From NCBI RefSeq assembly GCF_006345805.1, contig NW_021826031.1, positions 248,001 to 312,000 of the forward strand: 64,000 bases of DNA, given 5' to 3'. This DNA comes from Octopus sinensis (Eukaryota). Position numbers and translations under genes: made by a program. Under the pieces are notes generated by a model. The model searched no databases. It had not been told where the DNA came from and saw only the letters and a list, made by a program, of their open reading frames with translations. This document shows positions 2,253 to 54,684 of the stretch, piece by piece (position 1 is the stretch's first letter; every line of letters starts with the position of its first letter).

Positions 2253-3410
2253 ATGGACATATTAAATGTGCTGAACAATATTTTTGGCACGGAAAATGAC
2301 GATGATGTAATCGATCGTTTTAACCATACCTACACAGCGACACTTCTTGTGATTTTAGCAATTATTGTAACGTCCGACGATTTTGTAGGACCTCCCATCA
2401 AATGTTGGACCCCTGCTGAATTTACAGGTAATACTAATTTTTATTGCAGCAACATTCACCAAATACACGAATTCAATATGTTGGGTTACTAACACGTATT
2501 ATGTTTCAATGAACGACTCGGTCCCAGAAACTGATTATTTCATCGGAAAAAATCAAATAAAATATTACCAATGGACACAATTCATCTTTCTGTTCTTCGC
2601 TCTTTTATATAGACTTCCATTCATGTTTTGGAGGGGCCACAACACGGGTTGCGGACTCAATCTGAAAAACCTTATAAAAATTGGAACAAACTATCAAAAA
2701 TTCTTTCCTGGAGATGATAAAGAAAATCAAATTACTCAAATGATTGCACATTTTGAACGATATTTAGAAGTGAAAAAAAGATGGCATGCAAGAAATATCA
2801 ATTTACTGAACCGTTGGTTCTCCGAACATCGACTCACTTTGACATATTTCCTCGCAAAATTCTTTTATATAATTAACTCTGTCGTCCAATTTCTGCTCTC
2901 AAATTACCTTTTATCCAACAAAACGGGGAATATAGACGGATTTAAAATGATCCAGGACTTTGTACAAAGACAGAACAACGATTCTTCGTTATTTCCAAGA
3001 GTTGGGATGTGTGACTTTTATATTCGCGAACTTGGCAATGTTATGTACCCAGAACGGCATACTGTTCAGTGTGTTTTATCCAATAACGTTTACTTGGAAG
3101 GAATCTTTATTTTCTATTGGTTTTGGATGTGTTTTATCATTATTTCAAATATATCGACGACTATTTCATGGCTTTATCACGTTTTCAATCATGAAAAAAA
3201 ATTCAATTTGTAATGAAAAATATTCATCCTTATTTGAAAGAAGAAATAGCAAATTTGTCGACAGTTAAAGGATTTATTGATAAATATTTGGAGTCTGATG
3301 GGATTTTCGCAATTAATATGATTTCTAACAACACGAATCACAAAGTATCAAGGGCTCTTATCACCGGATTGTTTAAAAACTATAAAATCGTTAACAAGAT
3401 AAGCAGATAA
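2253..3410 (+). CDS. Innexin (invertebrate gap-junction protein)
   Basis: DDDVIDRFNHTYT, FVGPPIKCWTPAEF, YTNSICWV (after 22-nt intron 2428-2449), YYQW, FPRVGMCDF, HTVQCVLSNN and YLESDGIF are innexin motifs. One apparent frameshift near 3194-3213. Confidence 0.92.
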
Positions 3411-10063: not shown

Positions 10064-11123
10064 ATGGACCAGTGTCAGAACAAAGTCGACTACCACGAAG
10101 AAATTTCGAGACTTCTGGCACTATGCAACAGTGATAAGTACCAGTCTCTCACACAATTCGCCGTCGAAGGGAAACTTGGAAACGGACAGTTCAGTGTAGT
10201 GCTCACTGCACGCAGTCTGCTTGATAACCAATATTATGCCCTCAAACAAGTTCAAGTAACTCTAATAACAGCACTAAATTCCTAGATATTCGAAATGACT
10301 GATGCAAAGGCTCGTTATGACTGTCTGAAGGAGGTTGAATTATTAAAAGTATTTTTTATTACATAATAAAGAAATTAAATCATCCGAATGTAATCCAACA
10401 CCACTCTTCGTTTCTTCACATGAACGATTTGATAATTGTGATGGAACTGGCCGACTGGGGCGATTTGTCCAGACTTTTGAGTGTTTGACTGATATTTTTG
10501 ATTTTTAGACATTTCGGATACAAAATAGGAAATTGGGGGAGTTTTCAATTTGGCGATATTTCCTTCAAATTTGTCAGGGATTGAACCACATGCATTCACG
10601 TAGAATAATGCACAGAGGTCGTTTTTTCCGCTTATTTATAGATATAAAGCCAGCCAATATTTATATCACTTCTGAAGGACTTGTCAAATTGGGGGACTTG
10701 GGATTAGCTCGTTATTTTCCTTCCAATTCTTCTGTGGCTCATTCTTTGGGTTTGTTGGCTTGGTTAGTGTTAGTGGGGACTCCGTATTACATGTCCCCCG
10801 AGAGGATTAGTCAGCATGGGTATGACTTTTCTTCCGATGTGTGGTCCCTGGGTTGTATTCTTTACGAGATGGCTACTTTACGGGTGCCATTTCAGCCAGA
10901 ACAGGCCAATCTGATCGCCCTCTGTCGACAGATACAACACGAGGGCTACACGCCTATGGATCCTGATATTTACTCTTCCCAGGTTGGTTATGTTGGGGAT
11001 ATTTAGATGGTCGATTTGGTGGCTTTGTGTCTCAAGAAAAACCCTCTGGAGAGACCTGGCACTTCGAACATTATTCGTATTGCACACAGAATGTATGTGA
11101 CATTGCAAAAATTAAATACTTGA
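10064..11123 (+). CDS. NEK7: NEK6/NEK7-like Ser/Thr kinase
   Basis: KLGNGQFSVV, ALKQVQ|IFEMTDAKARYDCLKEVELLK, IVMELADWGDLS, MHSRRIMHR|DIKPANIYIT, VKLGDLGLARYF, GTPYYMSPERI; a single kinase domain with no long tail. NEK6 versus NEK7 not resolved. Confidence 0.9.
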
Positions 11124-17002: not shown

Positions 17003-18887
17003 ATGTCTGGTATTGCTTTAAACTCACAAATAGAACAAAAGTCCAAATGTCCAGAATGCGGGATGACAGATTTGGAGCTATTTAAAAATACAGGAATAAC
17101 CACCTGCATCAACTGTGGCTGTGTCGTGAACAAACTGCTACTCTCAGACGAAGTCGAGTTCCAAGAACTCTCCTCCGGCCGATGTGTGGCCCTCGGACAA
17201 GTCGTCTCTAAAAGCGGTTTCAATCCCGTCTCAGCATTCCAGGCGATACTGGAGCCACAGGCAAGTTGGGCCGGATTTTGAACACAAAGGCAATCTCCAA
17301 GGAAAAGTCTCTAATTAAGGGTAATTTATAAACTCGAATTTTCAGTAAAGGCAATGTCCCATGCCTTGGTCTATAAATTACACATCCCGTCCAACGTGGA
17401 GAAACACGCAATGAAGAACTTCCAACTATTTTCCTCCAAAGGATACACTCTCGGGAAGAAGTTGACTCATTTTGTGGGGGTTTGTCTCTACATTGGCTGC
17501 CGTGTTCACAAAACACCACGTTTATTCCTCAATTCTCAGTTTTAGACATGTTGTTGGATTTTAGCGAGATTTTGCGGACGGATATCAACGGATTGTACCG
17601 CATTCTGTTGATGTTGACAAAAAACGAACAGCTGGTCTTCCCGGTTGATGGTAAGTTTTATTTTCGACGTAGATCCCTCAATTTACTGTTCAAGGTTCGC
17701 GGAAGAAATGAATTTGGGGACCAATTTGTACACAGTCACTTGCTTTGCTGTCAAGATTATAAAAGCAATGCAAATCAACTGGATTGCCATTGGAAGGAAG
17801 CCTGTGGGGGTTTGTGCTGCTGCTTTGATTGTGGCTTGTTTGCTTCACGGAATAAACCGCGATTTCCGTGATGTGGCGGCCATGGTGGGTCTGAGGCCGG
17901 AGACTGTGGAGAAGCGTTTGTGTGAGTTCAAAAACACGGATTTTGGAGAGTGGACTGTCAAAAAGTTCAAAAATATGGAAATCAGCGAAGAGGACTGTCT
18001 GAAGCCCAGCATTCCTCAATTTAATGGAAAAAAAGTCAAAAAAGTGCAAATGGAACAAATATCACAAAAAGTTGAGGAAATCAGTCAAGAATTGGAATAT
18101 TTGATCGACCAGGAGAAATTTACGACTGAAATTCCTGTTTTCCCCACGGAAGAATCATTAAAGTTGGCAACGACTGCGGAATTGGGATTGAATGAGTCAG
18201 TCGAGGATTTGCTGGCCTTTAAGCCGCCTCCAAACGAACAGTCAGTCAGCGAAATGGTGGAGACTGACTTGGCAGACGTCGACGATGACGAAATCGCTCA
18301 AGTTCTGAACAGTCTGGAGGAAGTGGAGACCAAAAGGCGGATTTGGGAAGCCGAATATTCCGAGTTTATAGTCGAAATGACCAGTTCCCTCCAGTTTTTA
18401 TACTTCCAGGGAAAAGGGAGGAAAGAGAGCGGATAAAACAGCAGAATCAGGTTGGACTCAATTCGCGCAGAAAACGGGCTTCTTGTAAGCGAAAGCAGCC
18501 GGTTTGTCAGTGTGGATAATCCCAGCCAATTTCTGCCATGAAGTTTGAGACTGCAGGCCAGGCAATGGCGGAGGCAGTAAAGAGGAAAGGATTGCCAATG
18601 TCGTGTATTGAGGGACTCGATTCATTCACTCTTCCTACAGAGAAGGTGAAAAAACTGAGCGAGGAAGAAGATGTGGAGATGTTGAATGCTCCAGTCGTGA
18701 CGGTAGTGGAATGGTGGTATGGTAGGGGGATGATGGTGTCAAACATGAGTTGAAGGGGGACGAGGAAGGTTGGTAGTGTTAGTTCTAATAGTTGTAGAGT
18801 ACGACGACTTTGATAGGGGTCTTTGGTGGATTGTCATTTCTAGATTTGGATGATTTTGATGCTGAGCAGGATTATGATGGATTTTAA
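17003..18887 (+). CDS. BRF1: TFIIIB subunit BRF1
   Basis: Zinc ribbon CPECG...CINCGCV, SDEVEFQE, VGVCLYIGCR...HMLLDFS, VDPSIYCSRFA, WIAIGRKPVGVCAAALIVAC, TVEKRLCEFKNT, DVDDDEI, acidic C-terminus. Confidence 0.93.
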
Positions 18888-21845: not shown

Positions 21846-22400
21846 TTATTATTAGAACCAAGATCACCGTCCAAAACATAAAACTAATTAATCAGGTGAT
21901 CCCGGCTTCTCTGAGGAGGGTCCTCATCTTTGCCCGGTGCTCCTCCCTAGTCCCGACACAATTTCTGTGAAGGCGCGGTGGTGGAGTTTTAGGACCTGTA
22001 GACCGGAGGTTTCTTTTCAAGATTTCTTTAAATGGGGCGATAAATAAATGTTTATTCAGTCTTTGTGCTTTCCGAAAACTTTCTTGAGTTTTTTCGATTT
22101 TTACGCGGTTCGTTTCACTGACAAACCCTCCCCACGCCCCACGAGCATAACTAATGGAGGGTTCCATGTATTGCCGGTATAGTGATTGGCGTGTGGGGAA
22201 GCTGATGATCCATTGTTTGTATTTTCGGAGAAACACTTTTAAGATGTTCAGTTGCTTATGCAGCTAGTAGTAGTAACATTTTCAACTTGTTGGGGAGAAA
22301 CACATATGACAATCGTAATTACGCCGAGGATTTTCTGGGATTTTTTAAAGGGGATTTCCATGTTGTTTAGATATAAGTTCCTTGCTGAAGTCAAGCTTTC
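21845..22400 (-). mobile_element. I/Jockey-like LINE 3' fragment (copy also at 29860-30400)
   Basis: YRQYMEPSISYA...W, EEHRAKMRTLLREAGIT*, short (TAA)n tail. Confidence 0.8.
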
Positions 22401-22796
22401 TTGCTGAAGTCAGGCGGTAAGTCATATTGTGGCTGAGAGGCGAGCGTGTGTGCGGGACTGAAAAGCAGGAATGCAGATGTCTTTATCTACCCTCTACTAA
22501 CAGCCTCTATTAAAAAAATATTTTTCTTCTTTCGTGGACTACTTTTAAATACTGTTTTGCACCAAAAAATTTATTAACAGATTATAGTAATTATCGATTT
22601 AATTACGGCTGTGTGGCCAAAGAATGTATCCGCGTGATCTCAAAAAATCTATTAAAGCATATATCAGGTCGTATACTTTCATATGTACTGATTCCTATAA
22701 TATTAAAAAAACAAAACTAAACTAATATTTGCATATAAGCATTGTCCGATTCTTCATTATATAATTGATGGTTTTTTACGAAGTTCTGCAATATTG

Positions 22797-23443
22797 TTAA
22801 GATCTTACTGTCATATTTATTATTTGTTGAATATAAGTCTCCAAAAAAGAGGTGGTAAAATTATTCATCACAATCTTCTTCGGACAATGATTTGAAGTTC
22901 CGTTATAATAACCATCCTGTTATAAATATGCTTTTGATTACCTTTAATTAAGGAAGTATTTTTCATATGGTGTGGCAGAGGATCCTTGAAATTTAATTAA
23001 TTCGTAACCTTTCTCTGTGATATTACCATATAAGCAGTTAATGCAGTATTCTAGGGCCACTTCCTAGCAATTTAAAAATGTAATAACATACTAGAGGATA
23101 GAACCATTGATATTTGGCTCTAGATATGAAAATTAATAAACTTACCAATATCAGAGCTCCTGCATGAATCAAATTATGTATTTTTTTCTACAATTAGTTA
23201 TAGGAAGGTAACCTACCCCACAATCGATAGAAATATTCCTATCAATTGTATCTAGACTAATACGAAGAACGAAATGTATAAACCAACGGGTTAATTCACC
23301 CTAAAATATTAAACGAATATCAAAACAATGCATTCCCTGTAATCATATCTCTGTGTGGAGAGAGCCTGGTGAATTATCAAAAAAGTGAGAAACATTAAAA
23401 AAAAGTTCGGCAATTCAAGTTTATATTATTCTATTTGGAGCAG
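22797..23443 (-). pseudogene. Degenerate paralogue of the orphan gene at 30821-31470
   Basis: Same exons and tiny introns (e.g. 26-nt 23120-23145), but ATG changed to CTG and a 1-nt loss creates a stop before the fifth intron. Confidence 0.5.
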
Positions 23444-23809
23444 TTAATTAGATTTTCATTCCTGAAAATTACCAAAAGACTATTTTGGCTTGTTTTAATG
23501 GGTTCATGTTAAAAAAAATTGACAGTAATTGTTTTGTGCGTCTATATCTTATTCTGTGATTTAACTGGGCAATTCTTTACTATTATCAGATTTCAGCTCT
23601 TTTAAGGAATTCAACAAATTTGAATAAATATTTAAAAAATGTAAAGAATTTGGTTTTTTAAAAATGATTCCTGTTCAATGACAGCAGAAAAAAACCACTT
23701 GTTTACTAATTCTTTGGTTCAAAATTTAAATATATAAACAAAATTGAAAAATCCACATAAAATTAGTTTTTAATCAATGCCTCTGCTTTCAGTCGATCCT
23801 CCTTTTTTT

Positions 23810-24121
23810 CTAGTCCGAGTCAATGTCTTCGACGGATACACTTATCCATTTTACTGCGCAGGTAACTTTTGTGGTTGTTCTCGAGTCTGATTCTATGGTC
23901 TCATTCAGAGAAGCTTCCTCCGTCGTTGCCTTTGCAAAAAGAGTCATTTGACGATCTTCGGGTGGGTACATGGTTTCGGGTTCGAATCCCACCGGTTGCC
24001 TCTGCTTTAAACTCCGTTCGAGTTTTACGCGTAACGACGTCATGGATATCTCATCACATACAGACTCCGGATAAAACATCTCCAAATGTCTGTCGAGCTT
24101 CCTACCGTTAATCAACCGCAC
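23810..24121 (-). CDS. 3' exon of an unidentified gene (fragment)
   Basis: 103-codon ORF preceded by a pyrimidine-rich AG acceptor; its last ~35 codons recur at 31810-31927. No family recognised. Confidence 0.3.
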   Translation of the reverse strand: MRLINGRKLDRHLEMFYPESVCDEISMTSLRVKLERSLKQRQPVGFEPETMYPPEDRQMTLFAKATTEEASLNETIESDSRTTTKVTCAVKWISVSVEDIDSD

Positions 24122-25190: not shown

Positions 25191-25495
25191 TTAGTAGTAT
25201 TTGAGGCAATCGAAGAATTGGCTGAGAGGGATCGCATTATCGTTAAGCTCGAAAAGACAAGACGAAATTCCATCAAATTGGCAAATACGCTCCAGCTGGA
25301 CCAAGCTATCACTCAGGAGATAGAAGACACGACAGAAAAAATTGGAAATGTTCTTGTGAAAGCATTTGCCTCTCGAATTTGTAATTAAACAAAAAAGAAG
25401 AGGGAAACAATGTAGAAGAGGCATTCGTTGTCTTATTAATTTCCTCTCTCCTTTTTGTTTTTCCTTTTCGAATAAATACTAATTCATTCATTTAT
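25190..25495 (+). mobile_element. LINE 3' fragment with (TTCA)n tail (homologue at 42570-42865)
   Basis: KLEKTRRNSIKLA...; shared 3' UTR GAGGGAAACAA..GAAGAGGCAT.CGTTGTCTTATTAA. Confidence 0.6.
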
Positions 25496-25599
25496 GTATA
25501 TGTTTACGTATGCTTTCGGTTGACAAATGTAAACCGTAACGTTCTAACTATTTTTCAAACAATTCTTTCATTGAGAGCATAATATTCAATTCAATGCAT

Positions 25600-26150
25600 G
25601 CAAACATGTTTTCGCCAACTCTTTTTTTTCGCCGACAAGACCTCAACTTGTCTCCTCATGCCAGAGGACAGGGCATTGGAGCTCGGACTCACGCACAAAG
25701 GATATCTCCGCGAAAATACATTTTATGTACAGGACCCCATAGACGAGTTATTGATCGGGTTTGTCAAGCAGTGATTGAGAATAGACCGTCAACTCCATTC
25801 TACGTTTGCTCAACTCCTGGAGATGACAATTGGCCGACATTGACGTCTTGACCTATGGCTTACATGCCTGGAACTTCTGCAAGGACAGGGAGAAGTACGT
25901 TGATGCGCTCAAGAAAGCTAGAAGACGAGCCATCCGGTTAGCCCATGATTTTGGATTGCGAGAGAAGCTCAAGGATACTCAGGAATTGTCCCTCAAAGGC
26001 CTCCCTGAGGTCCTAGAGAAGATAATATCTGGGTGGCAGGTCAGGAGGTAAGTCAGTTTAAGGCTGAGAGGTGAGCGTGTGTGCGGGATTGAAAAGGTAG
26101 GAATGCAAAGGTCTTTATCTACTCTCTATTAACAGCTCTTTTTAAATAAA
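25600..26150 (+). mobile_element. LINE RT C-terminal fragment with 3' UTR
   Basis: VLTYGLHAWNFCK...LKKARRRAIRLA; the 3' UTR GGCTGAGAGG.GAGCGTGTGTGCGGGA also occurs at about 22430 and 30435. Confidence 0.65.
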
Positions 26151-26177
26151 TATTTTTCTTTTTCTGCAACTATTTAC

Positions 26178-26263
26178 GCCTAGCTGATCCTTGGTGTCCA
26201 AGGTACGGGCTTCAAACCCGTGGCCGGTTGACACCGGAGTGGTTCGATTCCAGTTAATGGGCG
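26178..26263 (+). tRNA. tRNA-Sec (anticodon TCA)
   Basis: Collinear with metazoan tRNA-Sec: 6-bp D stem CCTTGG/CCAAGG, 6-bp anticodon stem TACGGG/CCCGTG around CTTCAAA, long variable arm CCGGT/ACCGG, GTGG-TTCGATT-CCA T arm, 9/4 spacing, discriminator G, then TTTT. Confidence 0.88.
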
Positions 26264-26599
26264 TTTTATCTATGTAAAGCTTGATCAATTCTCTCGTTCC
26301 AATAAATAAATATCTTTTGCCGAAAAAAAAACTGTGAAAAAGTAATAAAAATAATAGACAGATAATTAGAACTAATTTAGACAGGCCAGCGAACAAATTG
26401 AAAACAATTTCCTTGGAGAATGGCAAAAAGTTCATCTGAAATAACCAGCTGCCAAAGAGGCCTCCAAAAATATTTTCCCGTTGTAAAAATGTCCTTTTTG
26501 GAAATTTATATGTTTTTAGTTAGCATTTTTGAAAGTTTAACTCCAATCACAAGACATCAAATGCTTTAATAAGTTTTTGAGTGATATAAGTTTAAAGTT

Positions 26600-28070
26600 T
26601 AACTTCAATCACTTGCATAATTCTGTTGTCATTACTAGAAATCAGTTTCTGAACTCAAAAACGGATTTTTAAAAATTAGCCCGTGATGGGGAGACGATTG
26701 AGGTAGCCCAGGGCATAAGAAAAGACATTTGGATGCACGGAGTGATGTGGTCTTGGAAGAGGGGATGGTGGACTGAGCGGACTCCTGTGTATATGGATTT
26801 TCCTGTTTAGAAATGATTCGGATCCATCGATATACAAAGTCTAGTAGTTTATTGTGTTCGAATGATCTGATGCCCTGAATGGAAATTTGATTGTTTATCT
26901 GTTTGGACATGGTTGATCTGTTTTTCGGAAAAGGTATTTTTAAGAGTGGTCTCAATTGGTCCGAAGAGTGGAGATGATATGCCTTTCGTTTTTTTCACAG
27001 GGAAACACAATGTTGTTGGGTGTCTAGGATCTCTGAGGAATTGTAATCCACAAATTTCCAAGTGATGCCAGACGGGGAAGATCCTGGATTCCCAGTGGAT
27101 GTGGTTGATAGGCGTTGATGGAAGACATCCAGTGACTGTATGCAAGCCAGCTTTCTGGAGGCGCTGAAGTTTTTTTAAGTTCGTAATGGATACATTTCAA
27201 GACCAGCATGGGGTGGCATGATTCAGGGATGTTCGAACAAATTGTTTATATACAATTAATAGGCTTTCTATTACTTGACTATAGAATTGGCCCGATATGG
27301 CTTTTAGGGCGTTTAGTTTGCGCTTTACTTACTGCATGTGAAGTCAATGTTTTGAGAAAAGGTGAGGCATTAGTCAAAGATGACCCACAAAATTCTTAAA
27401 TTTTTGAGGGTGGGTAGTTTTTGTGTGTTATGTAGATCAGGGGTTAAACTGTCGCCGTTCAGAAAATTTGAGTGTGCTTGATTAACTAAAGAATTAATCT
27501 TTTGAGGATTTTTGAAATTATGGAGAAGATAGAGATCGGTCTAAACAATTCAGGTTTACATAAATCCTTGTTTGGTTTGAGGATTGGAATGATGATTGAT
27601 TTTTTTATTTCATAGGTATTATAAAAAGAATTTAATGATGAATTCATAATATTTGATAGCGCCTTCAGCCCCCATAAATCTAAATTCTTTAGGTGGAGGC
27701 CATTAGGTCCCCTGGCGCGTGAGTTTTTTTTGCATTTTTGATCCGCTCGCACATTTTTTAGGAAGAAATAGTAATTAGATCTGAGTGTTTTTTCTTGTCA
27801 AAGAAGGGACTTCGGTTGCGGTTATTTTTGTTTATTTTATTTGGCTAATTTTCTGGTAGTGGTTGATGAGAGTGTTTGTCTGTTCGAGGAATTTTTTTCT
27901 TTTGTGTTTATTGTTTAGACACGATTTTGAATTTAAGTTTCTCTTGAATAAGGTTGATTATTTCTCGGTTTAGGAGAGGTTTTTGGTCATTGAAAAATTT
28001 TCTTGGTGTGAATTTTCTTAAATTTTAAACTCAATGTTTTTGATGTACGATTAACTACTCTTTTATTTTA
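26600..28070 (-). mobile_element. I/Jockey-like LINE with RT core deleted
   Basis: ARGPNGL...IIPILKPNKD...FRPISIFSIISKILKRLIL jumps to VIFD.CLTFSQ...KRKLNALKAISG...VYKQFVR...TGCLPSTP. Confidence 0.8.
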
Positions 28071-28089
28071 ATTATCAACACAAATCAAT

Positions 28090-29700
28090 CATTTTAATCA
28101 CATATTTTATCCTTATTAATTAAATGTTCCCAGGCTCGCTGAATTTGGTCAGGACTCAAATAATGTGACGAGATGATTTGTTTAAAATTACAAAAGTTTC
28201 CAGAGTATCTCACAAAATTGATTCCATTGTGGTGTATGAGACTGACATCCGTGTTCTTAATGCACATACCTGTAATATATATATGTAGCATTTCAACCCG
28301 TTATGTAAATGTCCTCAAACTTGATTATATTGGAAAAGTCACAATTTTCACAAAAGTCAAAAGTTGCAGATTTAGCCGCATATACAGTGGGATGAGATAT
28401 GTGATTCCAGTGTAGAACCACTTATCCGGTGTGTATTCACCATGGATTATCTTGACTAGTTCTTCACACAAGTGATCATGAATTGAGGTAATTTTTTAGA
28501 AAGAAATTATACACCCCATTACAACCGCTAGCTCTCCAGTTTGGGAGTTGTTTAATTATTTCAAGGATGCTTTCTTTACTAAACTCTGCAAATGTATCCT
28601 CTGCCCATGTCACTCTCTTGTTAATATGTAACACATTATCGCTCTTCTCATTTCTACTCCATATTTTTTTCCAATATGATAAACATTCACTGTTATTAAA
28701 CATAAACTCTGCACTCTTTTTTTCATCATTTAAACTGCGATAGAAACAACGCCGATTCAGTTCAAAGAACCAATTCTGTTTCCGAAATTCTTTTCTTGCA
28801 TCATGGAGTCGAAGTTTTTTCTCAACAATCTTTATTTCGTCTCCAATGCAAGCAGAAATTCTTCCAAGTTCTCCTTTCTTTGCCTTTCGATATCCATATT
28901 CACTCAGCGTATCCCTCGTTGCATTATCAAACTTCAAGCTTCCTTTTTGATCAATAAGTGTATTAGTCTGTTGGTATTGTTCTTTAAGTTTAATTAGTTT
29001 TGCTTCCATAATTCCTTTCCAGTTGTTATTCTTAGGAGAGTATTTTGTAAGAGCTTGGTATGTCAGCTGTGCAGCATAAATGATATCGGTGATATCATTC
29101 AAATTGACAGGAGGGTTGGTCTTTATATATTCATTAATCACTGCATTTATTCCAGACAATATTTTTTTTAAGTAGTTGATATGGGACTTTTTTGGTCGGC
29201 TTTCGTTTTTTTTGAGAGATAGATTTTACTTGCTCTATTCGGGAAGAAAATTCAATTGAGCAATCTCTAAAATTAGAGATCTCAGTCTTGTGATTCTTTT
29301 CTTGATCCATTGGAGAGTTAGACTTTGTTCCCGTCATCTTAGCCAGACTGTTCACGTTCGCCACAGATTTGGACGTGAGGAACTTTTCGTTAAAAGCCTG
29401 AGTAATCATAGGCCATCCACCACGTGGTATTCTTTTGAATCTTGCTCTAGAAACGTTAACCACTTCATTCGCCCATTTGATCATGTCCACCTGCGTTACT
29501 TGATCGATGATAGCCCATAGAGTTAACAGATTAGCAGGACAATCCGGTTGCAACACCGAATTTGGAGGGGGAATATCAGATTCTTGCGTTCCAAGCTGCC
29601 CACGGACCACACAATTTACGTTATTATTGGTTTCTCATTCATTATCTTTCGTAGATAGGTCCATTGGAAATGTTTCATTAATACCCAGTAGAAACAAACA
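28090..29700 (-). mobile_element. R4/Dong-like LINE, 5' region to start of RT
   Basis: RKPTKKVP, DITDIIYAAQ, ARKEFRKQNWFFELNRRCFYRSL, YWKKIW, LPNWRASGCNGVYNFFLK. Confidence 0.7.
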
Positions 29701-29720: not shown

Positions 29721-31927
29721 GTCTATTTCTATATTTTGCTTTAACATAAGTCAGACATGACGTGGCCATTTTACAGTAATAAGTAGTTTGGAATGCAAGT
29801 ATTGATTCAAATGCAGTTTTACAAAAAATGGGCAATTCTTTCGCCATTTGACACTTATTATTAGAACCAAAATCACCGTCCAAAACATAAAACTAATTAA
29901 TCAGGTGATCCCGGCTTCTCTGAGGAGGGTCCTCATCTTTGCCCGGGGCTCCTCCCTAGTCCCGACACAATTTCTGTTAAGGCGTGATGGTGGAGTTTTA
30001 GGGCCTATAGACCGGAGGTTTCTTTCCAAGATTTCTTTAAATGGGGCGATGAAAAGATGTTCATTCAGTCCTTGTGCTTTCTGAAAACTTTCTTGAGTTT
30101 TTTCGATTTTTACGCGGTTCGTTTCACTGACAAACCCTCCCCACACCCCAAAAGCATAACTAAGGGAGGGTTCGATGTATTGCCGGTATATTGATTGGCA
30201 TGTGGGGAAGCTGATCCATTGTTTGCATTTTCGGAGAAACACTTTTAAGATGTTCAGTTTCTTCATGCAACTGGTAGTAACATTTTCAACTTGTTGGGAG
30301 AAATACATATGACTATCGTAAGTCACGCCGAGGATTTTCTGGGATTTTTTAAAGGGGATTTCCATGTTGTTTAGATATAAGTTCCTTGCTGAAGTCAAGC
30401 TTTCTTGCTGAAGTCAGGCGGTAAGTCATATTGTGGCTGAGAGGCGAGCGTGTGTGCGGGACTAAAAAGGCAGGAATGCAGATGTCTTTATCTACCCTCT
30501 ACTAACAGCCTCTATTAAAAAAATATTTTCCTTCTTTCGTGGACTACTTTTAAATACTGTTTTGCACAAAAAAAATTTATTAACAGATTATAGTAAGCTT
30601 CGGATTATCGAGAAATTATCGAGTTAATTACGGCTGCGTTGCCAAAGAATGTATCCGTGTGATTCCAAAAAGTATATTAAAGCACTTCTCAGGTAAAATG
30701 ATTTTATATATACTGATCTCTATAATATTAAAAAACAAAACTAAACTAATATTTGCAAATAAGCGTTGTCCGATTCTTCATTATATAATTGATGGTTTTT
30801 TACGGCGTTCTGCAATATTGTTAAGATATTACTGTCATATTTATTATTTGTTGAAAATAAGTCTCCAAAAAAGAGGTGGTAAAATTATTCATCTCGATAT
30901 TCTCCGAACAATGATTTAAAATCACGTTATAATAATCAACCTGTTATAAATATGCTTTTGATTACCTCCAATTTAAAGAAGTATGTTTCATATGGTGTGG
31001 CAGAGGATCCTTGGAATTTAATTAATTCGTAACCTTTCTCTGTGATATTACCATATAAGCAGTTAATGCAGTATTCAAGGGCCACTTCCTAGCAATTTAA
31101 AAATATAATAACATACTAGAGGATAGATACCATCGATATTTGGCACTAGATATGAAAAGTAATAAACTTACCAATATCAGAGCCTCCTCCATGAATCAAA
31201 TTATGTATTTTTTTCTACAATTAGTTATAGGAACGTAACCTACCCCACAATCGATAGAAATATTCCTATCAATTTTACTTAGATCAATATGAGAAACGAA
31301 TTGTATTAACGAACGGGTTAATTCACCCTAAAATATTAAACAAATATCAAAACAATGCATTCCGTGTCATTATATCTCTGTGTGGAGAGAGCCTGGTGAA
31401 TTATCAAAAAAGTGAGAAACATTAAAAAAAAGTTCGGCAATTCAAGTTTATATTTTTCTATTTGGAGCATTTAATTAGAATTCCATTCCTGAAAATTATC
31501 AAAAGCCTATTTTGGCTTGTTTTAATGGGTTCATGTTAAAAAACATATGGACAGTAATTGTTTTATTCGTCTATATCTTATTCTGTGATTTAACTGGGCA
31601 ATTCTTTACTTTTTTCTGATTTTAGCTTTTTAGACGAATTCAAAAAATTTGAATAAATATTTTAAACAATGTAAAGAATTTGGTTTTTAAAAATGATTCC
31701 TGTTCAATGACAGCAGAAAAAAATCACTTGTTTACTAATTCTTTGGTTCAAAATTTAAATATATAAACAAAATTAAAAAATCTACATAATATTATTTTTT
31801 TAATCAGTGCCTCTGCTTTAAGTCGATTCTCCTTTTCTTATAGTCCGAGTCAATGTCTTTGACGGGTACACTTATCTATTTTACTGCGCAGGCAACTTTT
31901 GTGGTTGTTCTCGAGTCTGATTCTATG
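29721..31927 (+). repeat. Direct duplication copy 2 (partner 21710-23897)
   Basis: Collinear with copy 1; left junction against the R4-like LINE, right junction against the POR fragment. Confidence 0.9.
30821..31470 (-). CDS. Orphan spliced gene, ~170 aa, signal-peptide-like N-terminus (not in ORF track)
   Basis: Five GT-AG introns of 25-29 nt (incl. 31215-31243, 31146-31171, 31089-31116, 30941-30965) keep one frame: MLQIEKYKLELPNFFLMFLTFLIIHQALSTQRYNDTECI|GELTRSL...DCG|KKIHNLIHGGGSDI|VPNIDGIYPL|EVALEYCINC...TPYETYFFKLE|VDYYN... True stop uncertain. Confidence 0.55.
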
Positions 31928-31934
31928 ATTTCGC

Positions 31935-42184: not shown

Positions 42185-43189
42185 TTTTTTATTATTTTTT
42201 GAGGAAAATGTTTTTATTTTAATTGATCCAACTACGTCTACTAAGATTTAAAGCCAGCTTGTTTATGGAGGGTCGTGTAACTATGAATTAAGCATACTTT
42301 TAGTCTTTTGTTATATGGAAAGAAGTTGATTTACTAGGAAATCTGATCTTTCCTGTTTTAGAAGATGCATTAATTCTTTAAAAATTTCTGTAAGAATGGA
42401 TTAGTATCTCTATATTAGGTTATGTAAAGAAAGAATCCGAAATGTTTGAGATCAAACACAATTATTTAAGTACCATAGGTAAAACCGAGCAATAGAATTT
42501 GGCGAGCAATAAAATTTTTAAAATGAAAAAATTATTAAATTGTAGTTCTTTTAAGAAATTTCGAACCATTGCTTACCTACGGGTTCGCTGAGATGGATGG
42601 CATTATCACTAGGCTCAAAAAGACGAGACGATATGCCATCAAATTGGCAAATGGACTCCAGCTGGACCAACCCATTCCTCAAGAGATGGAAGACACGACG
42701 TAAACGATTGGAAGTGTTCTTGAGAGAGCCTTTTCTCCTCCAATCTTGAATTAAATATAAAAAAAGAGGGAAACAACGGAGAAGAGGCATACGTTGTCTT
42801 ATTAACTTTTTCTCTCTTTTTTCGGCTTTTCCGTTATAATAAAAAAATTCATTCATTCATTTAGTAAATTTATATGTTCGAATAAATTCATTTTGATAAA
42901 AAAGGATTCCAATTTTTAAAGTATTTTGAATGTTTTTTTCCGAATTCACAAGAGAATCTGTTCGTTTAAGTTCTTTATTCTCACCATCAATGGTTAAAGA
43001 ATTAAAATTCCTATTAAAGTAGTCGCGTCTCATCTTATTCCGCCAATTTTTGATTCATGAATTCATTTTGATCGACTAAAAATATTTAAAAATTAAATTC
43101 TTGAAAAATATGTCACAAGACAATTAAAAGTATTGAAATTCCAAAATTCAGATTAATAAACTTAATTAAAATTGGTTATTTTAATTTTG

Positions 43190-44110: not shown

Positions 44111-44397
44111 TCAAATTTTCTTAACTTCCAACGGCTTCTCTACAAATAACCCCAACCCAAAACCACTTCCTTGTTTTCTGTGAGCGTGTTTAAACGCACT
44201 CCCCGACTTGAGTGCCTCGAACAAACTCTCCATGATCCCCTCATTCGCCCCATACTTACTCAAAGTCGCCTTCCGCTTGTTAAGCGAGTTCTTCCTACGA
44301 TTCTCATTCTCCTTACGATTATTGATCTCGTCCACCGTGTCTTTAAAAATGCCACAAAATGAAAACCTTGAACTGCTTACTGAATTTGGCAATCGAC
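44111..44397 (-). pseudogene. DIAPH: Duplicated diaphanous C-terminus (DAD)
   Basis: SIAKFSKQFK|intron|DTVDEI...EGIMESLFEALKSGSAF; near-identical to 60080-60366. Confidence 0.88.
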
Positions 44398-45075
44398 AAC
44401 CTCGTTGTCCACTCCCCCGGCCTTCCACAAGGTTGATATCCACCTCTGTCGACACTGTCCAGGAGTCTTCATCCCCACACGAATGGCCACGTCCCCCCAG
44501 CGATATCTGGTCAGTCCATTCGTCCTCATGGCTGCCAACAATCTCTGGGAGTGACCAGGACAGACAACCTCGTCCTCCTCCACTCCCCACGTTTCTGGAC
44601 ATGTTTCTCGTTGTACCGTTTCTGGCACTCCACTCTGCTTCAATTGGACATGTACAGACTCAGTCACGTAGAATAACATTCTAACCTTCCTTGAAGGACA
44701 CTCGGTCACCCAAACACAGACTGTCCACTACTTCCAGCAAAATGTCATCCTCGGCTGACCCCCACGTCCTGCATACTCCACACAAACCACCTGTTTTGAT
44801 GCGATAACCGAATCTTCTGGTACCTCTGCAGACAAAAGAAGGTTTGATCTTCAGTCAGTGGGGTTTCATATTTTCCAAAATAAGATTGCATGAGGTCATA
44901 ATTCAGAGGGGGCTCATATGCATTCGAGTAAGTAGGTGTATATTCCTCAATAGATTGCCAAGGGATATCTTTTGACCAAATATCTTCATAAAAGGTGTAT
45001 GTATTGCCTGCCGCAAGTTGTAAACGATATTTTAACATCTCGCTCAAGACAAACAGAGAACATGTTACCAAAGAA
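44398..45075 (-). pseudogene. SNAPC4: SNAPC4/SNAP190-like Myb-repeat fragment
   Basis: IPWQSIE...CLQRY...TWGSAEDDILL...YMSN*SRVECQKRY...RGEW..EDE|RLLAAM...RWGDVA.RVGMKTPGQCRQRW: several Myb repeats with 22-27 nt introns, one TGA and frameshifts. SNAPC4 versus another multi-Myb protein is inferred. Confidence 0.55.
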
Positions 45076-49964: not shown

Positions 49965-51616
49965 CAGTGGTTCTCAACCTGGGGTCCGCGAAAGATTCCA
50001 GGGGGTCCGCGAGATTTTTCTGAAACTTTATTTAATGTTTCTATTTAATGATAACAATTTTAAATTAATATATAATAGAATTAAATCATAATTAATAATA
50101 ATCATAATTAATATATTATATTATTTATTTCAGGTGGTAGAACAAATAAAAACTTCATGCCATCAAAATTTCGCTATACAAGTTGATGAATCCACCGATG
50201 TAGCGAACTGTGCTCAATTAATAATATTTGCTCGTTATGTCTATGACGGAGATTTTAAAGAGGAATTTTTATTTTCCTATTCGCTTGAATCGACCACTAA
50301 AGGAGAAGATATTTTTCAAGCAATTTCTATGTTTTTTGACAGTGTTGGGTTATCTTGGAATAATGTATGTTGTTGCACAACCGATGGAGCTCCAGCAATG
50401 CTTGGCTTTCATTCTGGCTTTAGAGACCAAGTTAGACTTGCTAACCAGGAAACGAAACATATGCATTGTATGCTACATCGATATGCACTTGCTGCAAAAA
50501 CATTACCTTCAGATTTAAGATATGTTCTCGATGATGTCGTACATATCATAATTATATTAAAAAGAGTGCTTTAAATTCGCGCATTTTCAGACTTATTTGC
50601 GAAGAATTTGAAAAGGATGGAAAGGCTTTGTTATTCCACACTGAGGTGAGATGGCTATCTCGGGGAAACATTTTTGCCAGAGTTTTTTCTTTGAGGAATG
50701 AATTATCTGAATATTTTATTCGCGAAAACAATTCCAAATCATCGGAATTTATTTCGAAATTAATGGATAGTTCATGGCTATCTAAACTTGCTTACTTGAG
50801 AGATGTCTTCTCTCGTATAAATTCACTCAACAAATCGCTTCAGGGAAGACATGAAACAATAATTGATTTTGTGGATAAAATTAAGTTTGTTAACTGTTTC
50901 ATATTAATTATTAGTGCTTTTTTGATAAAGTTAACACTGTGGAAAGAAAAAGTAAAACTAAATAATTTTACTATGTTTGAATCTTTTGAAGAACAATCTG
51001 TAAATATAGATGCATTTGAAATCAAAAAAATAACCGAACTTATTTATGCACATTTAACATATCTAAAACAAGAAGTAAATAAATACTTTCCAGAATTGAA
51101 CGAAATTGATTTGAAATTCATTCGTACACCATTCAGTGTTGATCCACGTTTGGTCGATGAAAATATCGAAGAGGCTTTTATTGACATGATCAATAATTCA
51201 AACGCAAGAGATTTGTATGAAAAACTTGCTTTATCAAGATTTGAGTGCGAAATGTGTAAGCATTATCCTTCCGTAAGCGCAAATGCATTAAATTTGTTGC
51301 TTATATTCCCGACAACATATTTATGCGAACATGGCTTCTCAGCACTTCTCAATATAAAAAATAATCATCGCGCAAGACTGAATATTGAAGATGACATCAG
51401 GGTTTGCTTGTCGACAACCGAGCCTCTTATTGAAAAATTGCCTCGAAAAAACAATATCAACCTTCTCACTAATTTTCTCTATTGATTTAATAATAAATTT
51501 TGTTTTTAGATAAGTAAAATTTTTTTGACAAACAACTTAATAAATATGTAGGGGGTCCGCGAAATTTTTCATTTACTAACAAGGGGTCCGCGGACAAAAA
51601 AGGTTGAGAACCACTG
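49965..51616 (+). mobile_element. Buster-type hAT (5'-deleted transposase)
   Basis: Perfect 15-bp TIR CAGTGGTTCTCAACC; TSD GCTTAAGG (49957-49964, 51617-51624); FAIQVDESTD, TTDGAPAM, HCMLHR, LFHTEVRWLSRG, FPTTYLCEHGFS. Confidence 0.95.
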
Positions 51617-51789
51617 GCTTAAGGTTTGGAAATTAGATTTTGAATATATTTATGTTGTCATTTGCCAACGTTAGGGTCTGGGTTAAAGTTAAAGTTGTTA
51701 CAAACTTGCAAACAATTTGATGTAAATTATAATTTGCTAATGTTGCAATTTATATTATCAAAAATAAAAATAATTCACGTTATAATTTA

Positions 51790-51925
51790 CATGTGTTTTG
51801 GACGTCTCAAGACCCTGAGAACGCACAATCCTCTGGAGACGAGATGGCTCCTCCAGAACGTGTCCCAAGCAATAGTGAGGGGAAACTGGATCGCCATCAG
51901 TTCTTCTGCTTTACATACATTAGTT
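51790..51925 (+). mobile_element. CRE-like LINE tail fragment
   Basis: ETRWLLQNVSQAIVRGNWIAI. Confidence 0.55.
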
Positions 51926-52173
51926 TAACTTGATTAAATTTTCATTGGAATAAATTAACAATCATTAAAAAAAAATTTACTAGTGTTGTAAATAATTTTA
52001 CTATTTTAAAGCAAGCATTTTTCAAATATAAAACATCATTTTTTCAAAAATTTAAAGTTCAATCATTATTTCGGAACGCTTGCCTCTATATTAGTTGGCC
52101 TTTTAGTAAATATTTGCTAAGTAGTTGCCATAGAAACACGTAAAGGACAGGTTGCCTATATGGGTCTGATCAC

Positions 52174-53844
52174 TAGGGCAACCAAAAGTCATATAAGTCA
52201 TATTATTTTTTATTGGTCATATTGATGTTATTTCTATAATTAATAAACTATTATTATATTTTTTAATAGTTTTATTAATTTTTTTAGGTCTTATAGGTCA
52301 TATTTTATGCCGTTAGGTCATATTATTTTTTTATGTCATATTTTTTTTGTCAGGTCATATTTATATTTATTAAATCATATATTTTTATTAATCTTTGTTT
52401 AAATTTTGACAATAACACGTTTTCACACGTTTTGGTAGTTGGCCGCTTAAATATTATAGATTTTTACATGCCGAAACAAAAGCAATCTAACAATCAAAAG
52501 TTAAATAAAATAATTAAACGATACCCGTCTGAATTTCAGATTGATTCAGCCGGACGTTTATTTTGTTTGAAATGCTCAGTTTTTGTTAATTTTACGAAAA
52601 CGTTTAATGTGGTGCAGCACAGGGAAACTACCCGGCATAAAAAGGAACAGACAAAATTTCAAACGCAACTCAACACTCCTCCGAAACTTGAAGCAAAGAA
52701 AAATTTCGGAATTTGCTTAGTCGAAATGATGACGAAGGCGAATATACCTTTTTACAAAATAAGAAATGAACACTTTATTAATTTTTTTAATAATCTCGGA
52801 TTTACTGTTCCCAGCGAAAGTTGGTGCAGAAATATAGTTCCAGATTTGCAATATCAATTGATTGAAATGCTTAAAACAATTATGATATAAAAAGGGAAAA
52901 TTTTTTATTATTTATTTCTGATGCTGCCCGTTATATGACTTTAGCAGCGAGTACATTGAAGGTTATGTATATTAAAATGATTCATATAACTTGTTTTGCT
53001 CATCTTCTGCACAATTGTGCATTAAAGATTAGAGCACATTATAAATATATTGACGACTTAATCTTGTCTATCAAAATGTCGATTGTAAAAAATCCCTCCC
53101 GGAGGAGTCTTTTTACAGTTATTGGACTTCCACCTGATGTTGTTCTAACAAGATGGGGCAGCTGGTCGGACGCAGCAAAATATTATAGTCGACATCTTTC
53201 AAGAGTTCGCGAAATTGTCTTATCCTATCCAAATTGTGGAAAGATTGTGATGAATGCGAAAAATGCTGTTAGCTCTGAAAATTTGGAGAAAAATCTGGCA
53301 GAGTTAATGGCTTCATACAACCCTATTATTGATGAAATCAGAAAATGCCAAGAAAAATTTTATACAATTAAAGATGCAATTGAATTCATTGATTCCGTTA
53401 ATTTTGGTGAGGATAATTGTGACATCAACAAGTATTTTTTAAAGCGGATAAGTATGTTACCATGGACGAATATTAAAAATGCTAGAATTTCTAGTATTTC
53501 TCCAGAAACATTTATTTACTTATGGAAATGTCCTTCAACATCAATATCTGCAGAAAGAAGCTTTTCTATGCTGAATAAATTGCTCGAAAAGGATAGAAAC
53601 TTCAAGCCAGAAAATATTAAATATTATATGATGCAATATTATAATAAATTCATTGATTGAAATGTTTAATTTTTTCATATTTTCAAATTCAGAATATCTA
53701 AAAATCAAAATTCGATAGGTCATATTTTGATTTTTTAGGTCATATTTTAATATTTTTAAGTTATATTTTAGAATTTTAAAGTCATAAAGTCATATTTTTT
53801 ACGGTCATATTTAACTTTTTAAGGTCATATTTCTGGTTGCCCTA
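52174..53844 (+). mobile_element. hAT with CGGBP1-like transposase (internally deleted)
   Basis: TIR TAGGGCAACC / GGTTGCCCTA; TSD CTGATCAC (52166-52173, 53845-53852); GGTCATATT subterminal repeats; RLFCLKC...VVQHRETTRH zinc finger, ANIPFYKI, SDAA.YM, IHITCFAHLLH, TRWGSW, STSISAERSFS. Confidence 0.9.
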
Positions 53845-54595: not shown

Positions 54596-54648
54596 GTGTG
54601 TGTCTGTCTGTCTGTCTGTGTGTCTGTCTGTCTGTCTGTCTGTCTGTG
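54596..54648. repeat. (GTCT)n/(GT)n microsatellite
   Basis: Direct reading of the sequence. Confidence 0.95.
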
Positions 54649-54684
54649 CACACCCACATTCAAATTGTTACAAACCAGATCAAT

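What the first reader, a model, noticed from the sequence alone, without database searches (positions are those of the whole stretch)
26141..26267. Divergent tRNA-Sec with its upstream region replaced by a LINE tail
The D, anticodon and variable stems differ from human tRNA-Sec yet all pair (compensatory changes), implying selenoprotein recoding was retained. However, the D loop has 3 nt (TGT versus TGGT), the acceptor stem has G-A and C-A mismatches, and the T stem has a G-G pair. Metazoan tRNA-Sec depends on upstream PSE and TATA elements. Here a LINE 3' end stops about 26 nt upstream, and its TTTAAATA tail sits at -37 to -30, where a TATA box belongs. This is either a decaying duplicate or a gene using a retrotransposon-derived promoter.
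Basis: partly seen in the sequence, partly recalled or inferred. Interest (0 to 1): 0.7.

Follow-up and report, generated by a model that had tools for sequence, protein, structure and literature searches.

The report
Degenerate selenocysteine tRNA gene beside retroposon
This is a selenocysteine-tRNA gene copy, probably in a dicyemid parasite genome, that keeps its anticodon, three perfect stems and terminator but has a damaged acceptor/T helix, a shortened D loop and a retroposon tail where its upstream promoter should be, so it is more likely dying than working.

Summary
Rfam calls one tRNA-Sec at 26178-26262 (+), at 56.6 bits against a gathering score of 47. It has a UCA anticodon, G73 at 26263 and a TTTT terminator. 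The D, anticodon and variable stems pair perfectly. The defects are also real:
- The D loop is UGU, so one of the universally conserved G18/G19 is missing.
- The acceptor stem has G.A, C.A and U.U, and U in place of the universal C66.
- The first T-stem pair is G.G.

Only 9 of the 13 acceptor/T pairs are standard. ARAGORN misses the gene at default settings but finds human tRNA-Sec placed in the same flanks.

Upstream, a 125-nt repeat (26040-26164, with two more copies in the window) ends at -14, not -26. It contains the TTTAAATA motif. It follows a decayed reading frame and looks like a 5'-truncated non-LTR retroposon tail of at least 600 nt.

Introns of 20-30 nt, 35% GC and the innexin matches point to a dicyemid mesozoan. 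I found no report on selenocysteine use in that group.

The likeliest reading (about 0.55) is a non-functional tRNA-Sec gene whose promoter was displaced. A working, divergent gene using the retroposon's TATA-like tail (about 0.3) is not excluded. No related genome could be reached, so this stays undecided.

The parts
26178..26263 (+). tRNA-Sec-type gene of 86 nt including discriminator G73. Segments: acceptor 5' strand 26178-26186; D arm 26189-26203 (loop TGT at 26195-26197); anticodon arm 26204-26222 (TCA at 26212-26214); variable arm 26224-26237; T arm 26239-26253; acceptor 3' strand 26254-26262.
   Evidence: Rfam RF01852 at 56.6 bits, E 8.6e-9. Segments and pairs are listed.
26254..26258 (+). 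Defective stretch of the acceptor 3' strand, TTAAT. It gives a G-U wobble at pair 9 (U instead of the universal C66), U.U at pair 8, C.A at pair 7 and G.A at pair 6. The adjacent G at 26253 makes the G.G first T-stem pair.
   Evidence: NC line of the Rfam alignment, pair list, and the invariant positions reported in PMC5330540.
26241..26251 (+). GGTTCGATTCC, an intact internal B-box-like sequence in the T arm.
   Evidence: Read from the sequence. The B-box consensus GGTTCGANTCC is from general knowledge of Pol III promoters.
26264..26267 (+). TTTT run directly after G73, a Pol III terminator. There is no encoded CCA.
26141..26153 (+). TTTAAATAAATAT, a TATA-like run at -37 to -25 (TAAATA at -31 to -26). 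It lies inside the repeat tail.
   Evidence: A TAWAWA hexamer falls in the -37..-22 interval at 5.6% of arbitrary window positions.
26040..26164 (+). 125-nt repeat, taken to be the end of a reading frame plus the 3' UTR of a non-LTR retroposon. It ends at -14. Other copies are at 22409-22533 and 30413-30538, about 85% identical.
   Evidence: blastn, MAFFT and local alignments. The TAA stop at 26049-26051 is conserved in the other copies.
25560..26051 (+). Decayed, frameshifted reading-frame remnant leading into the repeat tail (the last open piece is 25830-26051). Interpreted as the C-terminal part of a 5'-truncated LINE ORF2.
   Evidence: Six-frame translations. There were no Pfam or pairwise hits, so the LINE identity is inferred.
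27486..27752 (-). Reverse-transcriptase N-terminal fragment of another LINE on the opposite strand, downstream of the tRNA and pointing towards it.
   Evidence: phmmer match to human LINE-1 ORF2p residues 512-547, E 0.005.

Best explanation
This is a genomic copy of the selenocysteine tRNA gene, not a retro-copy of the mature tRNA, in what is probably a dicyemid mesozoan genome. It was under structural selection for a long time but is now most likely non-functional or severely hypomorphic.

Proposed sequence of events:
1. A 5'-truncated non-LTR retroposon fragment of at least 600 nt came to lie with its 3' end 14 nt upstream of the gene.
2. That pushed whatever upstream Pol III elements the gene depended on at least 600 nt away. 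tRNA-Sec genes lack a usable A box and, in vertebrates, need a TATA box at -30, a PSE at -70 and a DSE at -200.
3. With transcription lost or reduced, the gene accumulated changes that damage parts selenocysteine tRNA needs. These are a one-base deletion in the D loop (loss of G18 or G19, the elbow contacts), two extra mismatches in the acceptor stem, C66 changed to U, and a G.G pair at the top of the T stem. Together they break up the 13-bp acceptor/T helix, the hallmark 9/4 fold of eukaryotic tRNA-Sec (that SepSecS and EFSec read this helix is my recollection, not checked here).

Shown: the gene, its pairs and defects, the repeat and its boundary, and the terminator. Inferred: the order of events, the loss of transcription, the LINE identity and the organism.

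I could not test whether a canonical copy exists elsewhere (a decaying duplicate) or whether this is the only copy in a lineage that is losing selenocysteine (a relic).
For: - Rfam scores the gene 56.6 bits, only 9.6 above the gathering score. Non-standard pairs are marked at acceptor pairs 6-8 and T-stem pair 1, and there is a gap in the D loop.
- The pair list gives 9 standard pairs out of 13 in the acceptor/T helix.
- G18, G19 and C66 are among only six positions that are 100% conserved in 553 eukaryotic tRNA-Sec genes. Here one G is missing and position 66 is U.
- In the same survey, 145 of 252 extra G73 copies carried structure-disrupting mutations and were judged non-functional. So G73 plus UCA does not prove function.
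- ARAGORN found tRNA-Sec in all 55 metazoan benchmark genomes that have one. It finds nothing here at default settings or at -ps, and calls the gene only at -ps80. It does find human tRNA-Sec placed in the same flanks, and it finds the window gene once the acceptor and T pairs are idealised in silico.
- The cloverleaf costs -28.1 kcal/mol against an MFE of -32.8. For human tRNA-Sec the cloverleaf is the MFE, at -37.1.
- In humans, a single G.G mismatch at the adjacent pair (C65G) halves Pol III occupancy, lowers tRNA level by about 65%, impairs U34 modification and UGA recoding, and causes disease.
- The upstream sequence from -14 to at least -620 is repeat-derived.
- In mouse, a 3.2-kb insertion between the PSE and DSE abolishes Trsp transcription.
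Against: - All disruptive changes fall in the acceptor/T helix and D loop. The 34 stem nucleotides of the D, anticodon and variable arms have none. Under random decay that happens with probability of roughly (26/60)^4, about 0.04 (my estimate). It could instead mean the three arms are still under selection and the helix is relaxed in this lineage.
- The U.U mismatch is ancestral, since human tRNA-Sec has it.
- G73, U33, U55, C61, the anticodon loop CUUCAAA, the B box and a clean TTTT terminator are all intact.
- A TATA-like run sits at -31 to -26.
- Dicyemids evolve very fast and were not in the 553-genome survey.
- No second, canonical copy has been shown to exist.
Confidence: 0.55

Rival explanations
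1. This is the working tRNA-Sec of a fast-evolving dicyemid. The 3-nt D loop and the loosened acceptor/T helix are tolerated lineage-specific features. The gene is transcribed by Pol III from the TATA-like run supplied by the retroposon tail, with the intact B box, so a retroposon 3' end has been co-opted as promoter.
For:
- The UCA anticodon, G73, U33, U55, C61, the B box and an immediate TTTT are all intact.
- TAAATA sits at -31 to -26, where vertebrate Trsp has its TATA box. Such a hexamer falls in that interval at only 5.6% of window positions.
- The defects avoid three of the five stems.
- The score is above the Rfam gathering score and above Secmarker's 40-bit cut-off, although that cut-off belongs to a different model.
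- The human C65G tRNA still supports basal selenoprotein synthesis.
Against: - Two of the six universally invariant positions are violated.
- Three consecutive non-standard pairs plus a G.G leave one G-U wobble as the only standard pair among pairs 6-10 of the 13-bp helix.
- ARAGORN rejects the gene.
- The TATA-like run is an inherent part of the repeat, since the other copies have ATTAAAAAAATA, so its presence needs no selection.
- No PSE could be recognised or tested.
Confidence: 0.3
2. The copy was created by the retroposon itself. Read-through transcription of a LINE sitting upstream of the true tRNA-Sec gene carried the gene along (3' transduction), and the whole unit was inserted here, dead or weakened on arrival.
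For: - The order of elements (retroposon 3' end, 13 nt, tRNA gene with its own flank and no CCA) is what 3' transduction produces.
- An imperfect direct repeat, AATAAATA(T/A)..., flanks the gene at 26145-26169 and 26301-26325.
Against: - No convincing target-site duplication was found for the combined unit.
- The flanking repeat is AT-rich, low-complexity and only 76% identical.
- The parent locus would need the same LINE immediately upstream.
- Nothing distinguishes this from a plain insertion next to a resident gene.
Confidence: 0.08
3. It is not derived from tRNA-Sec at all, but is a chance or tRNA-Ser-like sequence that happens to pass the Rfam threshold.
For: RF01852 has imperfect specificity in Metazoa: 86.7%, with 4.1 predictions per positive genome.
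Against: - The full-length match has E 8.6e-9.
- It shows the features specific to tRNA-Sec: a 6-bp D stem with a very short loop, a 9+4 arrangement, a long variable arm, a UCA anticodon in a CUUCAAA loop, and G73.
- The 5' T-stem strand and T loop are almost identical to human.
Confidence: 0.03

Closest known systems
Eukaryotic selenocysteine tRNA (Rfam RF01852; human TRU-TCA1-1 / mouse Trsp)
   Same: 9+4 layout, 6-bp D stem, long variable arm, CUUCAAA anticodon loop with UCA, G73, the U.U mismatch at acceptor pair 8, a GUGG 5' T-stem strand and a UUCGAUU-type T loop. There is no usable A box, and a TATA-like run sits near -30.
   Different: The D loop has 3 nt instead of 4, so one of G18/G19 is missing. 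There are extra G.A and C.A mismatches, U instead of C66, and a G.G first T-stem pair. No PSE or DSE is recognisable, because the upstream region is retroposon-derived.
Human TRNAU2 (the chromosome 22 tRNA-Sec pseudogene) and the many structure-disrupted extra tRNA-Sec copies reported by Secmarker (PMC5330540)
   Same: A tRNA-Sec-like sequence with several disrupted acceptor-stem pairs, embedded among retroposons and lacking the native promoter. That paper judges such copies non-functional.
   Different: TRNAU2 has C73 and arose by retroposition of the tRNA, so homology is limited to the mature sequence. This copy keeps G73 and a TTTT terminator, encodes no CCA, and has three flawless stems.
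Human TRU-TCA1-1 C65G patient allele (PMC10415148)
   Same: A G.G purine-purine clash at the junction of the acceptor and T stems.
   Different: The human mutation is at acceptor pair 9. Here the G.G is one pair further in, at T-stem pair 1. The human allele has a single defect and is a viable hypomorph. This gene has that kind of defect plus three or four more.
Retroelements that integrate next to Pol III genes (Dictyostelium TRE5/TRE3, yeast Ty3). Recalled from general knowledge, not tested here.
   Same: A non-LTR retroposon end lies within about 14 nt of a tRNA gene start, and another LINE fragment on the opposite strand points at its 3' side.
   Different: There is only one locus. No target-site duplication was found and there is no evidence of a targeting preference. 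In a genome that is about 49% repeats, this may be coincidence.

Membership tests
Eukaryotic tRNA-Sec (functional gene) | Covariance-model match above the curated threshold | tested here: met
   RF01852 gives 56.6 bits against a gathering score of 47, E 8.6e-9, over the full length.
Eukaryotic tRNA-Sec (functional gene) | UCA anticodon in a 7-nt loop, with U33 | tested here: met
   The loop is CTTCAAA at 26210-26216, with TCA at 26212-26214.
Eukaryotic tRNA-Sec (functional gene) | G at discriminator position 73 | tested here: met
   G at 26263. The criterion is from PMC5330540.
Eukaryotic tRNA-Sec (functional gene) | 13-bp acceptor/T helix in a 9/4 fold | tested here: not met
   The lengths fit 9+4, but only 9 of the 13 pairs are standard. 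G.A, C.A and U.U are at acceptor pairs 6-8 and G.G is at T-stem pair 1. Human has one non-standard pair.
Eukaryotic tRNA-Sec (functional gene) | 6-bp D stem with a 4-nt D loop containing G18 and G19 (invariant in 553 eukaryotes) | tested here: not met
   The stem is 6 bp and perfect, but the loop is TGT with a single G. Invariance is reported.
Eukaryotic tRNA-Sec (functional gene) | Invariant U55, C61 and C66 | tested here: not met
   U55 and C61 are present, but position 66 is U at 26254, giving a G-U wobble.
Eukaryotic tRNA-Sec (functional gene) | Long variable arm (the SerRS identity element) | tested here: met
   A 5-bp stem with a 4-nt loop, all standard pairs.
Eukaryotic tRNA-Sec (functional gene) | Recognised by ARAGORN at default settings (100% sensitivity on 55 metazoan genomes) | tested here: not met
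   No call at default or -ps; a call only at -ps80. The human control in the same flanks is found.
Eukaryotic tRNA-Sec (functional gene) | Upstream type-3 Pol III promoter (TATA near -30 and a PSE near -55 to -70) | tested here: inconclusive
   A TATA-like TAAATA is at -31 to -26, but it belongs to the repeat. No PSE consensus exists for this organism, and the window contains no snRNA gene to derive one from.
Eukaryotic tRNA-Sec (functional gene) | The genome encodes the Sec machinery and selenoproteins, and the tRNA is expressed and CCA-tailed | not testable with these tools
   The source genome and its relatives are absent from every searchable collection. No paper links dicyemids and selenocysteine.
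Non-LTR (LINE) retroposon 3' fragment | Copies share a 3' end but differ in 5' extent (5' truncation) | tested here: met
   The locus copy continues upstream into a reading-frame remnant. The 22.4k/30.4k instance starts at the 125-nt point. Both end at the same ...TTTC.
Non-LTR (LINE) retroposon 3' fragment | Reverse-transcriptase coding sequence upstream of the tail | tested here: inconclusive
   The fragment retains only about 500 nt of decayed frame. There was no Pfam hit, no tblastx match to other LINE pieces in the window and no BLASTP similarity. A DRE-type C-terminal motif was seen by eye only.
Non-LTR (LINE) retroposon 3' fragment | Target-site duplication flanking the insert | tested here: inconclusive
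   The only candidate is a gapped match, TTCT(GC)AACTATTT, at 25542-25555 and 26162-26175.

The most novel reading that the evidence does not exclude
Dicyemid mesozoans still decode UGA as selenocysteine, and this is their working tRNA-Sec. On that reading it would be the first eukaryotic tRNA-Sec known to lack one of the otherwise invariant G18/G19 residues and C66. It would have a markedly irregular acceptor/T helix, and it would be transcribed from a TATA-like element donated by the 3' tail of a retroposon that replaced the ancestral upstream promoter.
Probability: 0.25. Interest if true: 0.7.

Novelty: new member of a known kind. Interest (0 to 1): 0.4.

Why it matters
tRNA-Sec is the best single genomic marker of whether an organism uses selenocysteine. 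Complete loss of that trait in animals is reported only for some insects, mites and plant-parasitic nematodes (PMC5330540). I found no paper on selenocysteine in dicyemids.

This locus shows that the dicyemid lineage had a structurally selected tRNA-Sec until recently. Each possible outcome would be informative:
- If this is the only copy and it is dead, dicyemids would be a new, independent loss of selenocysteine in an extremely reduced parasite.
- If it works, it relaxes rules for tRNA-Sec that were thought universal (G18/G19, C66, a regular 13-bp helix), and it gives an example of a retroposon tail serving as a Pol III promoter.
- If it is merely a decaying duplicate, it is ordinary.

A scan of the whole genome would separate the three outcomes.

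Tried and rejected
- **Finding orthologues or other copies.**
  - Three protein homology searches found no close relative. The queries were a BRF1 exon, an innexin exon, and full-length BRF1 spliced by hand.
  - The best partial BRF1 hit, P0163, lies on a compact unrelated eukaryotic contig, L001.
  - Exact look-ups of three window ORFs found nothing on record. One of them was the spurious ORF antisense to the tRNA.
- **DNA pattern scans.**
  - The D arm plus anticodon loop gave 0 hits in metagenome contigs.
  - It gave one hit in a bacterial MAG, L010. That hit lies where Rfam finds no RNA match and the sequence does not look like a tRNA, so it is a chance match.
  - The anticodon loop plus GTGGTTCGATTCCAG gave 8 metagenome hits, none of which is a tRNA by Rfam.
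- **Alternative folds that would rescue the acceptor stem.** A 3-nt bulge would let GCC/UAGCUG pair perfectly with CAGUUA..GGC, but it uses up the T stem. Rejected by inspection. The MFE fold is not tRNA-like.
- **Twin-priming link** between the 125-nt tail at 30.4k and the adjacent minus-strand LINE ORF. Rejected, because that ORF has its own stop codon and the tail already contains the stop of a different frame.
- **tRNA-derived SINE head.** Rejected, because TTTT follows G73 directly and there is no other copy in the window, even at E<=1.
- **Retro-copy of the mature tRNA.** Rejected, because no CCA is encoded.
- **Pfam or PDB evidence that the upstream fragment is a LINE.** None was found. 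Only the downstream minus-strand fragment matched L1 ORF2p.
- **Literature and supplements on selenocysteine in dicyemids.** Nothing was found beyond a KEGG pathway label.

Full report
**What is there**

Rfam finds exactly one RNA family match in the 64-kb window. It is tRNA-Sec (RF01852) at 26178-26262 on the + strand, at 56.6 bits against a gathering score of 47, with E 8.6e-9 and covering the full model. Nothing else appears even at E<=1.

Read as the eukaryotic 9/4 cloverleaf, the gene divides as follows:

| Segment | Sequence |
|---|---|
| Acceptor 5' strand | GCCUAGCUG |
| Linker | AU |
| D arm | CCUUGG-UGU-CCAAGG |
| Anticodon arm | UACGGG-CUUCAAA-CCCGUG |
| Spacer | G |
| Variable arm | CCGGU-UGAC-ACCGG |
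| Spacer | A |
| T arm | GUGG-UUCGAUU-CCAG |
| Acceptor 3' strand | UUAAUGGGC |
| Discriminator | G73 (26263) |
| Terminator | TTTT (26264-26267) |

The D, anticodon and variable stems (17 pairs) are all standard pairs. Six of those pairs differ on both sides and still pair.

No CCA is encoded and a Pol III terminator follows G73 directly. This is therefore a gene-type copy, not a retro-copy of the mature tRNA.

**What is wrong with it**

- The acceptor stem reads G-C, C-G, C-G, U-G, A-U, G.A, C.A, U.U, G-U.
- The T stem reads G.G, U-A, G-C, G-C.

The U.U is shared with human and so is ancestral. The G.A, C.A and G.G pairs are extra, so only 9 of the 13 pairs of the acceptor/T helix are standard. 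Among pairs 6-10 the only pairing left is one G-U wobble.

The D loop is UGU rather than UGGU. The Secmarker survey of 553 eukaryotic tRNA-Sec genes found only six invariant positions besides the anticodon and G73: G18, G19, U33, U55, C61 and C66 (PMC5330540). Here one of G18/G19 is missing and position 66 is U.

Three further results point the same way:
- **ARAGORN.** It found tRNA-Sec in all 55 metazoan benchmark genomes that have one. It finds nothing here at default settings or at -ps, and calls the gene only at -ps80. It does find human tRNA-Sec placed in the same flanks, and it finds the window gene once the acceptor and T pairs are idealised in silico.
- **Folding energy.** The cloverleaf costs -28.1 kcal/mol against an MFE of -32.8 for a fold that is not tRNA-like. 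For the human sequence the cloverleaf is the MFE, at -37.1.
- **Human genetics.** A single G.G clash at the neighbouring pair (C65G) halves Pol III occupancy, lowers tRNA level by about 65%, impairs U34 modification and UGA recoding, and causes disease (PMC10415148).

**Upstream region**

A 125-nt stretch at 26040-26164 recurs at 22409-22533 and 30413-30538 at about 85% identity. Those two copies lie inside a larger duplicated block, so there are effectively two independent instances. They share the same 3' end (...AAATATTTTTCTT-TTTC) and differ in 5' extent, which is how 5'-truncated non-LTR retroposons behave.

At this locus the shared stretch begins 9 nt before the TAA stop (26049-26051) of a reading frame. 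That stop is conserved in the other copies. Frameshifted remnants of the frame can be followed back to about 25560.

I could not show reverse-transcriptase homology for this fragment, so 'LINE tail' remains an inference. A different LINE fragment downstream on the other strand (27486-27752) does match human L1 ORF2p, at E 0.005.

The TTTAAATA at -37..-30 is as described, and TAAATA at -31..-26 lies inside the repeat, where the other copies read ATTAAAAAAATA. A TAWAWA hexamer falls in the -37..-22 interval at 5.6% of arbitrary positions in this AT-rich window. Its presence is therefore only mildly unusual and needs no selection.

No convincing target-site duplication was found. A low-complexity direct repeat flanks the gene.

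**Organism**

- The window is 35% GC.
- It carries an innexin gene.
- Its NEK-type kinase and BRF1 genes have 13 introns of 20-30 nt.
- Gene density is about one gene per 10 kb, among LINE, hAT, Helitron-type and Tc5/pogo fragments.

Among animals, introns shorter than 30 nt are known only from dicyemids and myxozoans (PMC13644364; PMC6543705). Dicyema japonicum has 36.7% GC, 49% repeats and expanded LINE ORF2 genes (PMC6736024).

The best innexin matches (E 1e-52 to 1e-36) are proteins labelled Octopus sinensis, on small contigs, with no other octopus members in their clusters. One Trichinella innexin (E 2e-47) ranks among them. The next matches are rotifer, nematode and mussel innexins at about 1e-30. 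O. sinensis is the host of D. japonicum. I therefore take those proteins to be dicyemid contamination of the octopus assembly, and the window to be dicyemid. This is an inference.

I found no paper that mentions selenocysteine or selenoproteins together with dicyemids.

**Mechanism and verdict**

tRNA-Sec genes have no usable A box. In vertebrates they depend on a TATA box at about -30, a PSE at about -70 and a DSE at about -200, and in mouse a 3.2-kb insertion between the PSE and DSE abolishes Trsp transcription (PMC3459062).

Here everything from -14 to at least -620 is repeat-derived. The most economical story is that the retroposon fragment separated the gene from its promoter, and that the gene has since picked up four or five damaging changes.

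I put about 0.55 on the gene being non-functional or severely hypomorphic. Within that, I cannot say whether a canonical copy exists elsewhere or whether the lineage is losing selenocysteine.

The main rival, at about 0.3, is a working but unorthodox tRNA-Sec. It would use the TATA-like run in the tail together with the intact B box (GGTTCGATTCC, 26241-26251). In its favour, all the damage avoids the D, anticodon and variable stems. By my estimate that has roughly a 0.04 chance under random decay. G73, the anticodon loop and the terminator are also intact.

Origin by 3' transduction (about 0.08) and a false positive (about 0.03) are minor alternatives.

**Limits**

No related genome could be reached with the available collections. 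Conservation, copy number, expression and the presence of the selenocysteine machinery are therefore all untested. The steps listed under decisive next steps should settle the matter.

Noticed in passing
window 10200-11010 and 17003-18520: Thirteen spliceosomal introns of 20-30 nt (GT...AG) in a NEK-type kinase gene and a BRF1 (TFIIIB) gene. BRF1 could be spliced by hand into an open frame of more than 440 aa. Introns this short are known in animals only from dicyemids and myxozoans.
   Followed up: yes
window 2509-3213 (+): The best database matches of this innexin exon are five proteins labelled Octopus sinensis, on 160-550 kb contigs, with no orthologues from other octopuses in their clusters. 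They score far above any other mollusc innexin, which suggests dicyemid contamination in that octopus reference assembly.
   Followed up: partly
window 21890-23900 and 29900-31930: A block of about 2 kb is present twice in the same orientation at about 93% identity. Each copy carries a minus-strand LINE C-terminal ORF (21892-22236 and 29901-30398) abutting the plus-strand 125-nt tail copy.
   Followed up: partly
window 26145-26169 and 26301-26325: An imperfect AT-rich direct repeat (76% over 25 nt; core AAATAAATAT) brackets the tRNA gene at a spacing of 156 nt. It could be a target-site duplication of a small inserted unit or just low-complexity chance.
   Followed up: partly
window 26600-29700 (-): A mosaic of decayed LINE pieces on the minus strand, pointing towards the 3' side of the tRNA. 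It includes two separate starts of the reverse-transcriptase domain (ending at 28476 and at 27486-27752) and a thumb-like region at about 26650-27400. The tRNA therefore sits between retroposon 3' parts that converge on it from both sides.
   Followed up: partly
window 50600-59300: A cluster of DNA-transposon remnants: hAT-like ORFs (50628-51485, 52333-53660; weak hAT dimerisation hit), a PIF1-type (Helitron-like) helicase fragment (56532-57236) and a Tc5/pogo DNA-binding domain (58540-59250, minus strand).
   Followed up: partly
window 25218-25492 and 42584-42857: Another interspersed repeat at 81% identity, just upstream of the retroposon fragment that abuts the tRNA. Not classified.
   Followed up: no
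window 44111-44602 (-) and 61467-61964 (-): Pieces of formin-like genes: a Diaphanous autoregulatory-domain match (below the Pfam cut-off) and a proline-rich FH1-like ORF. Not examined further.
   Followed up: no
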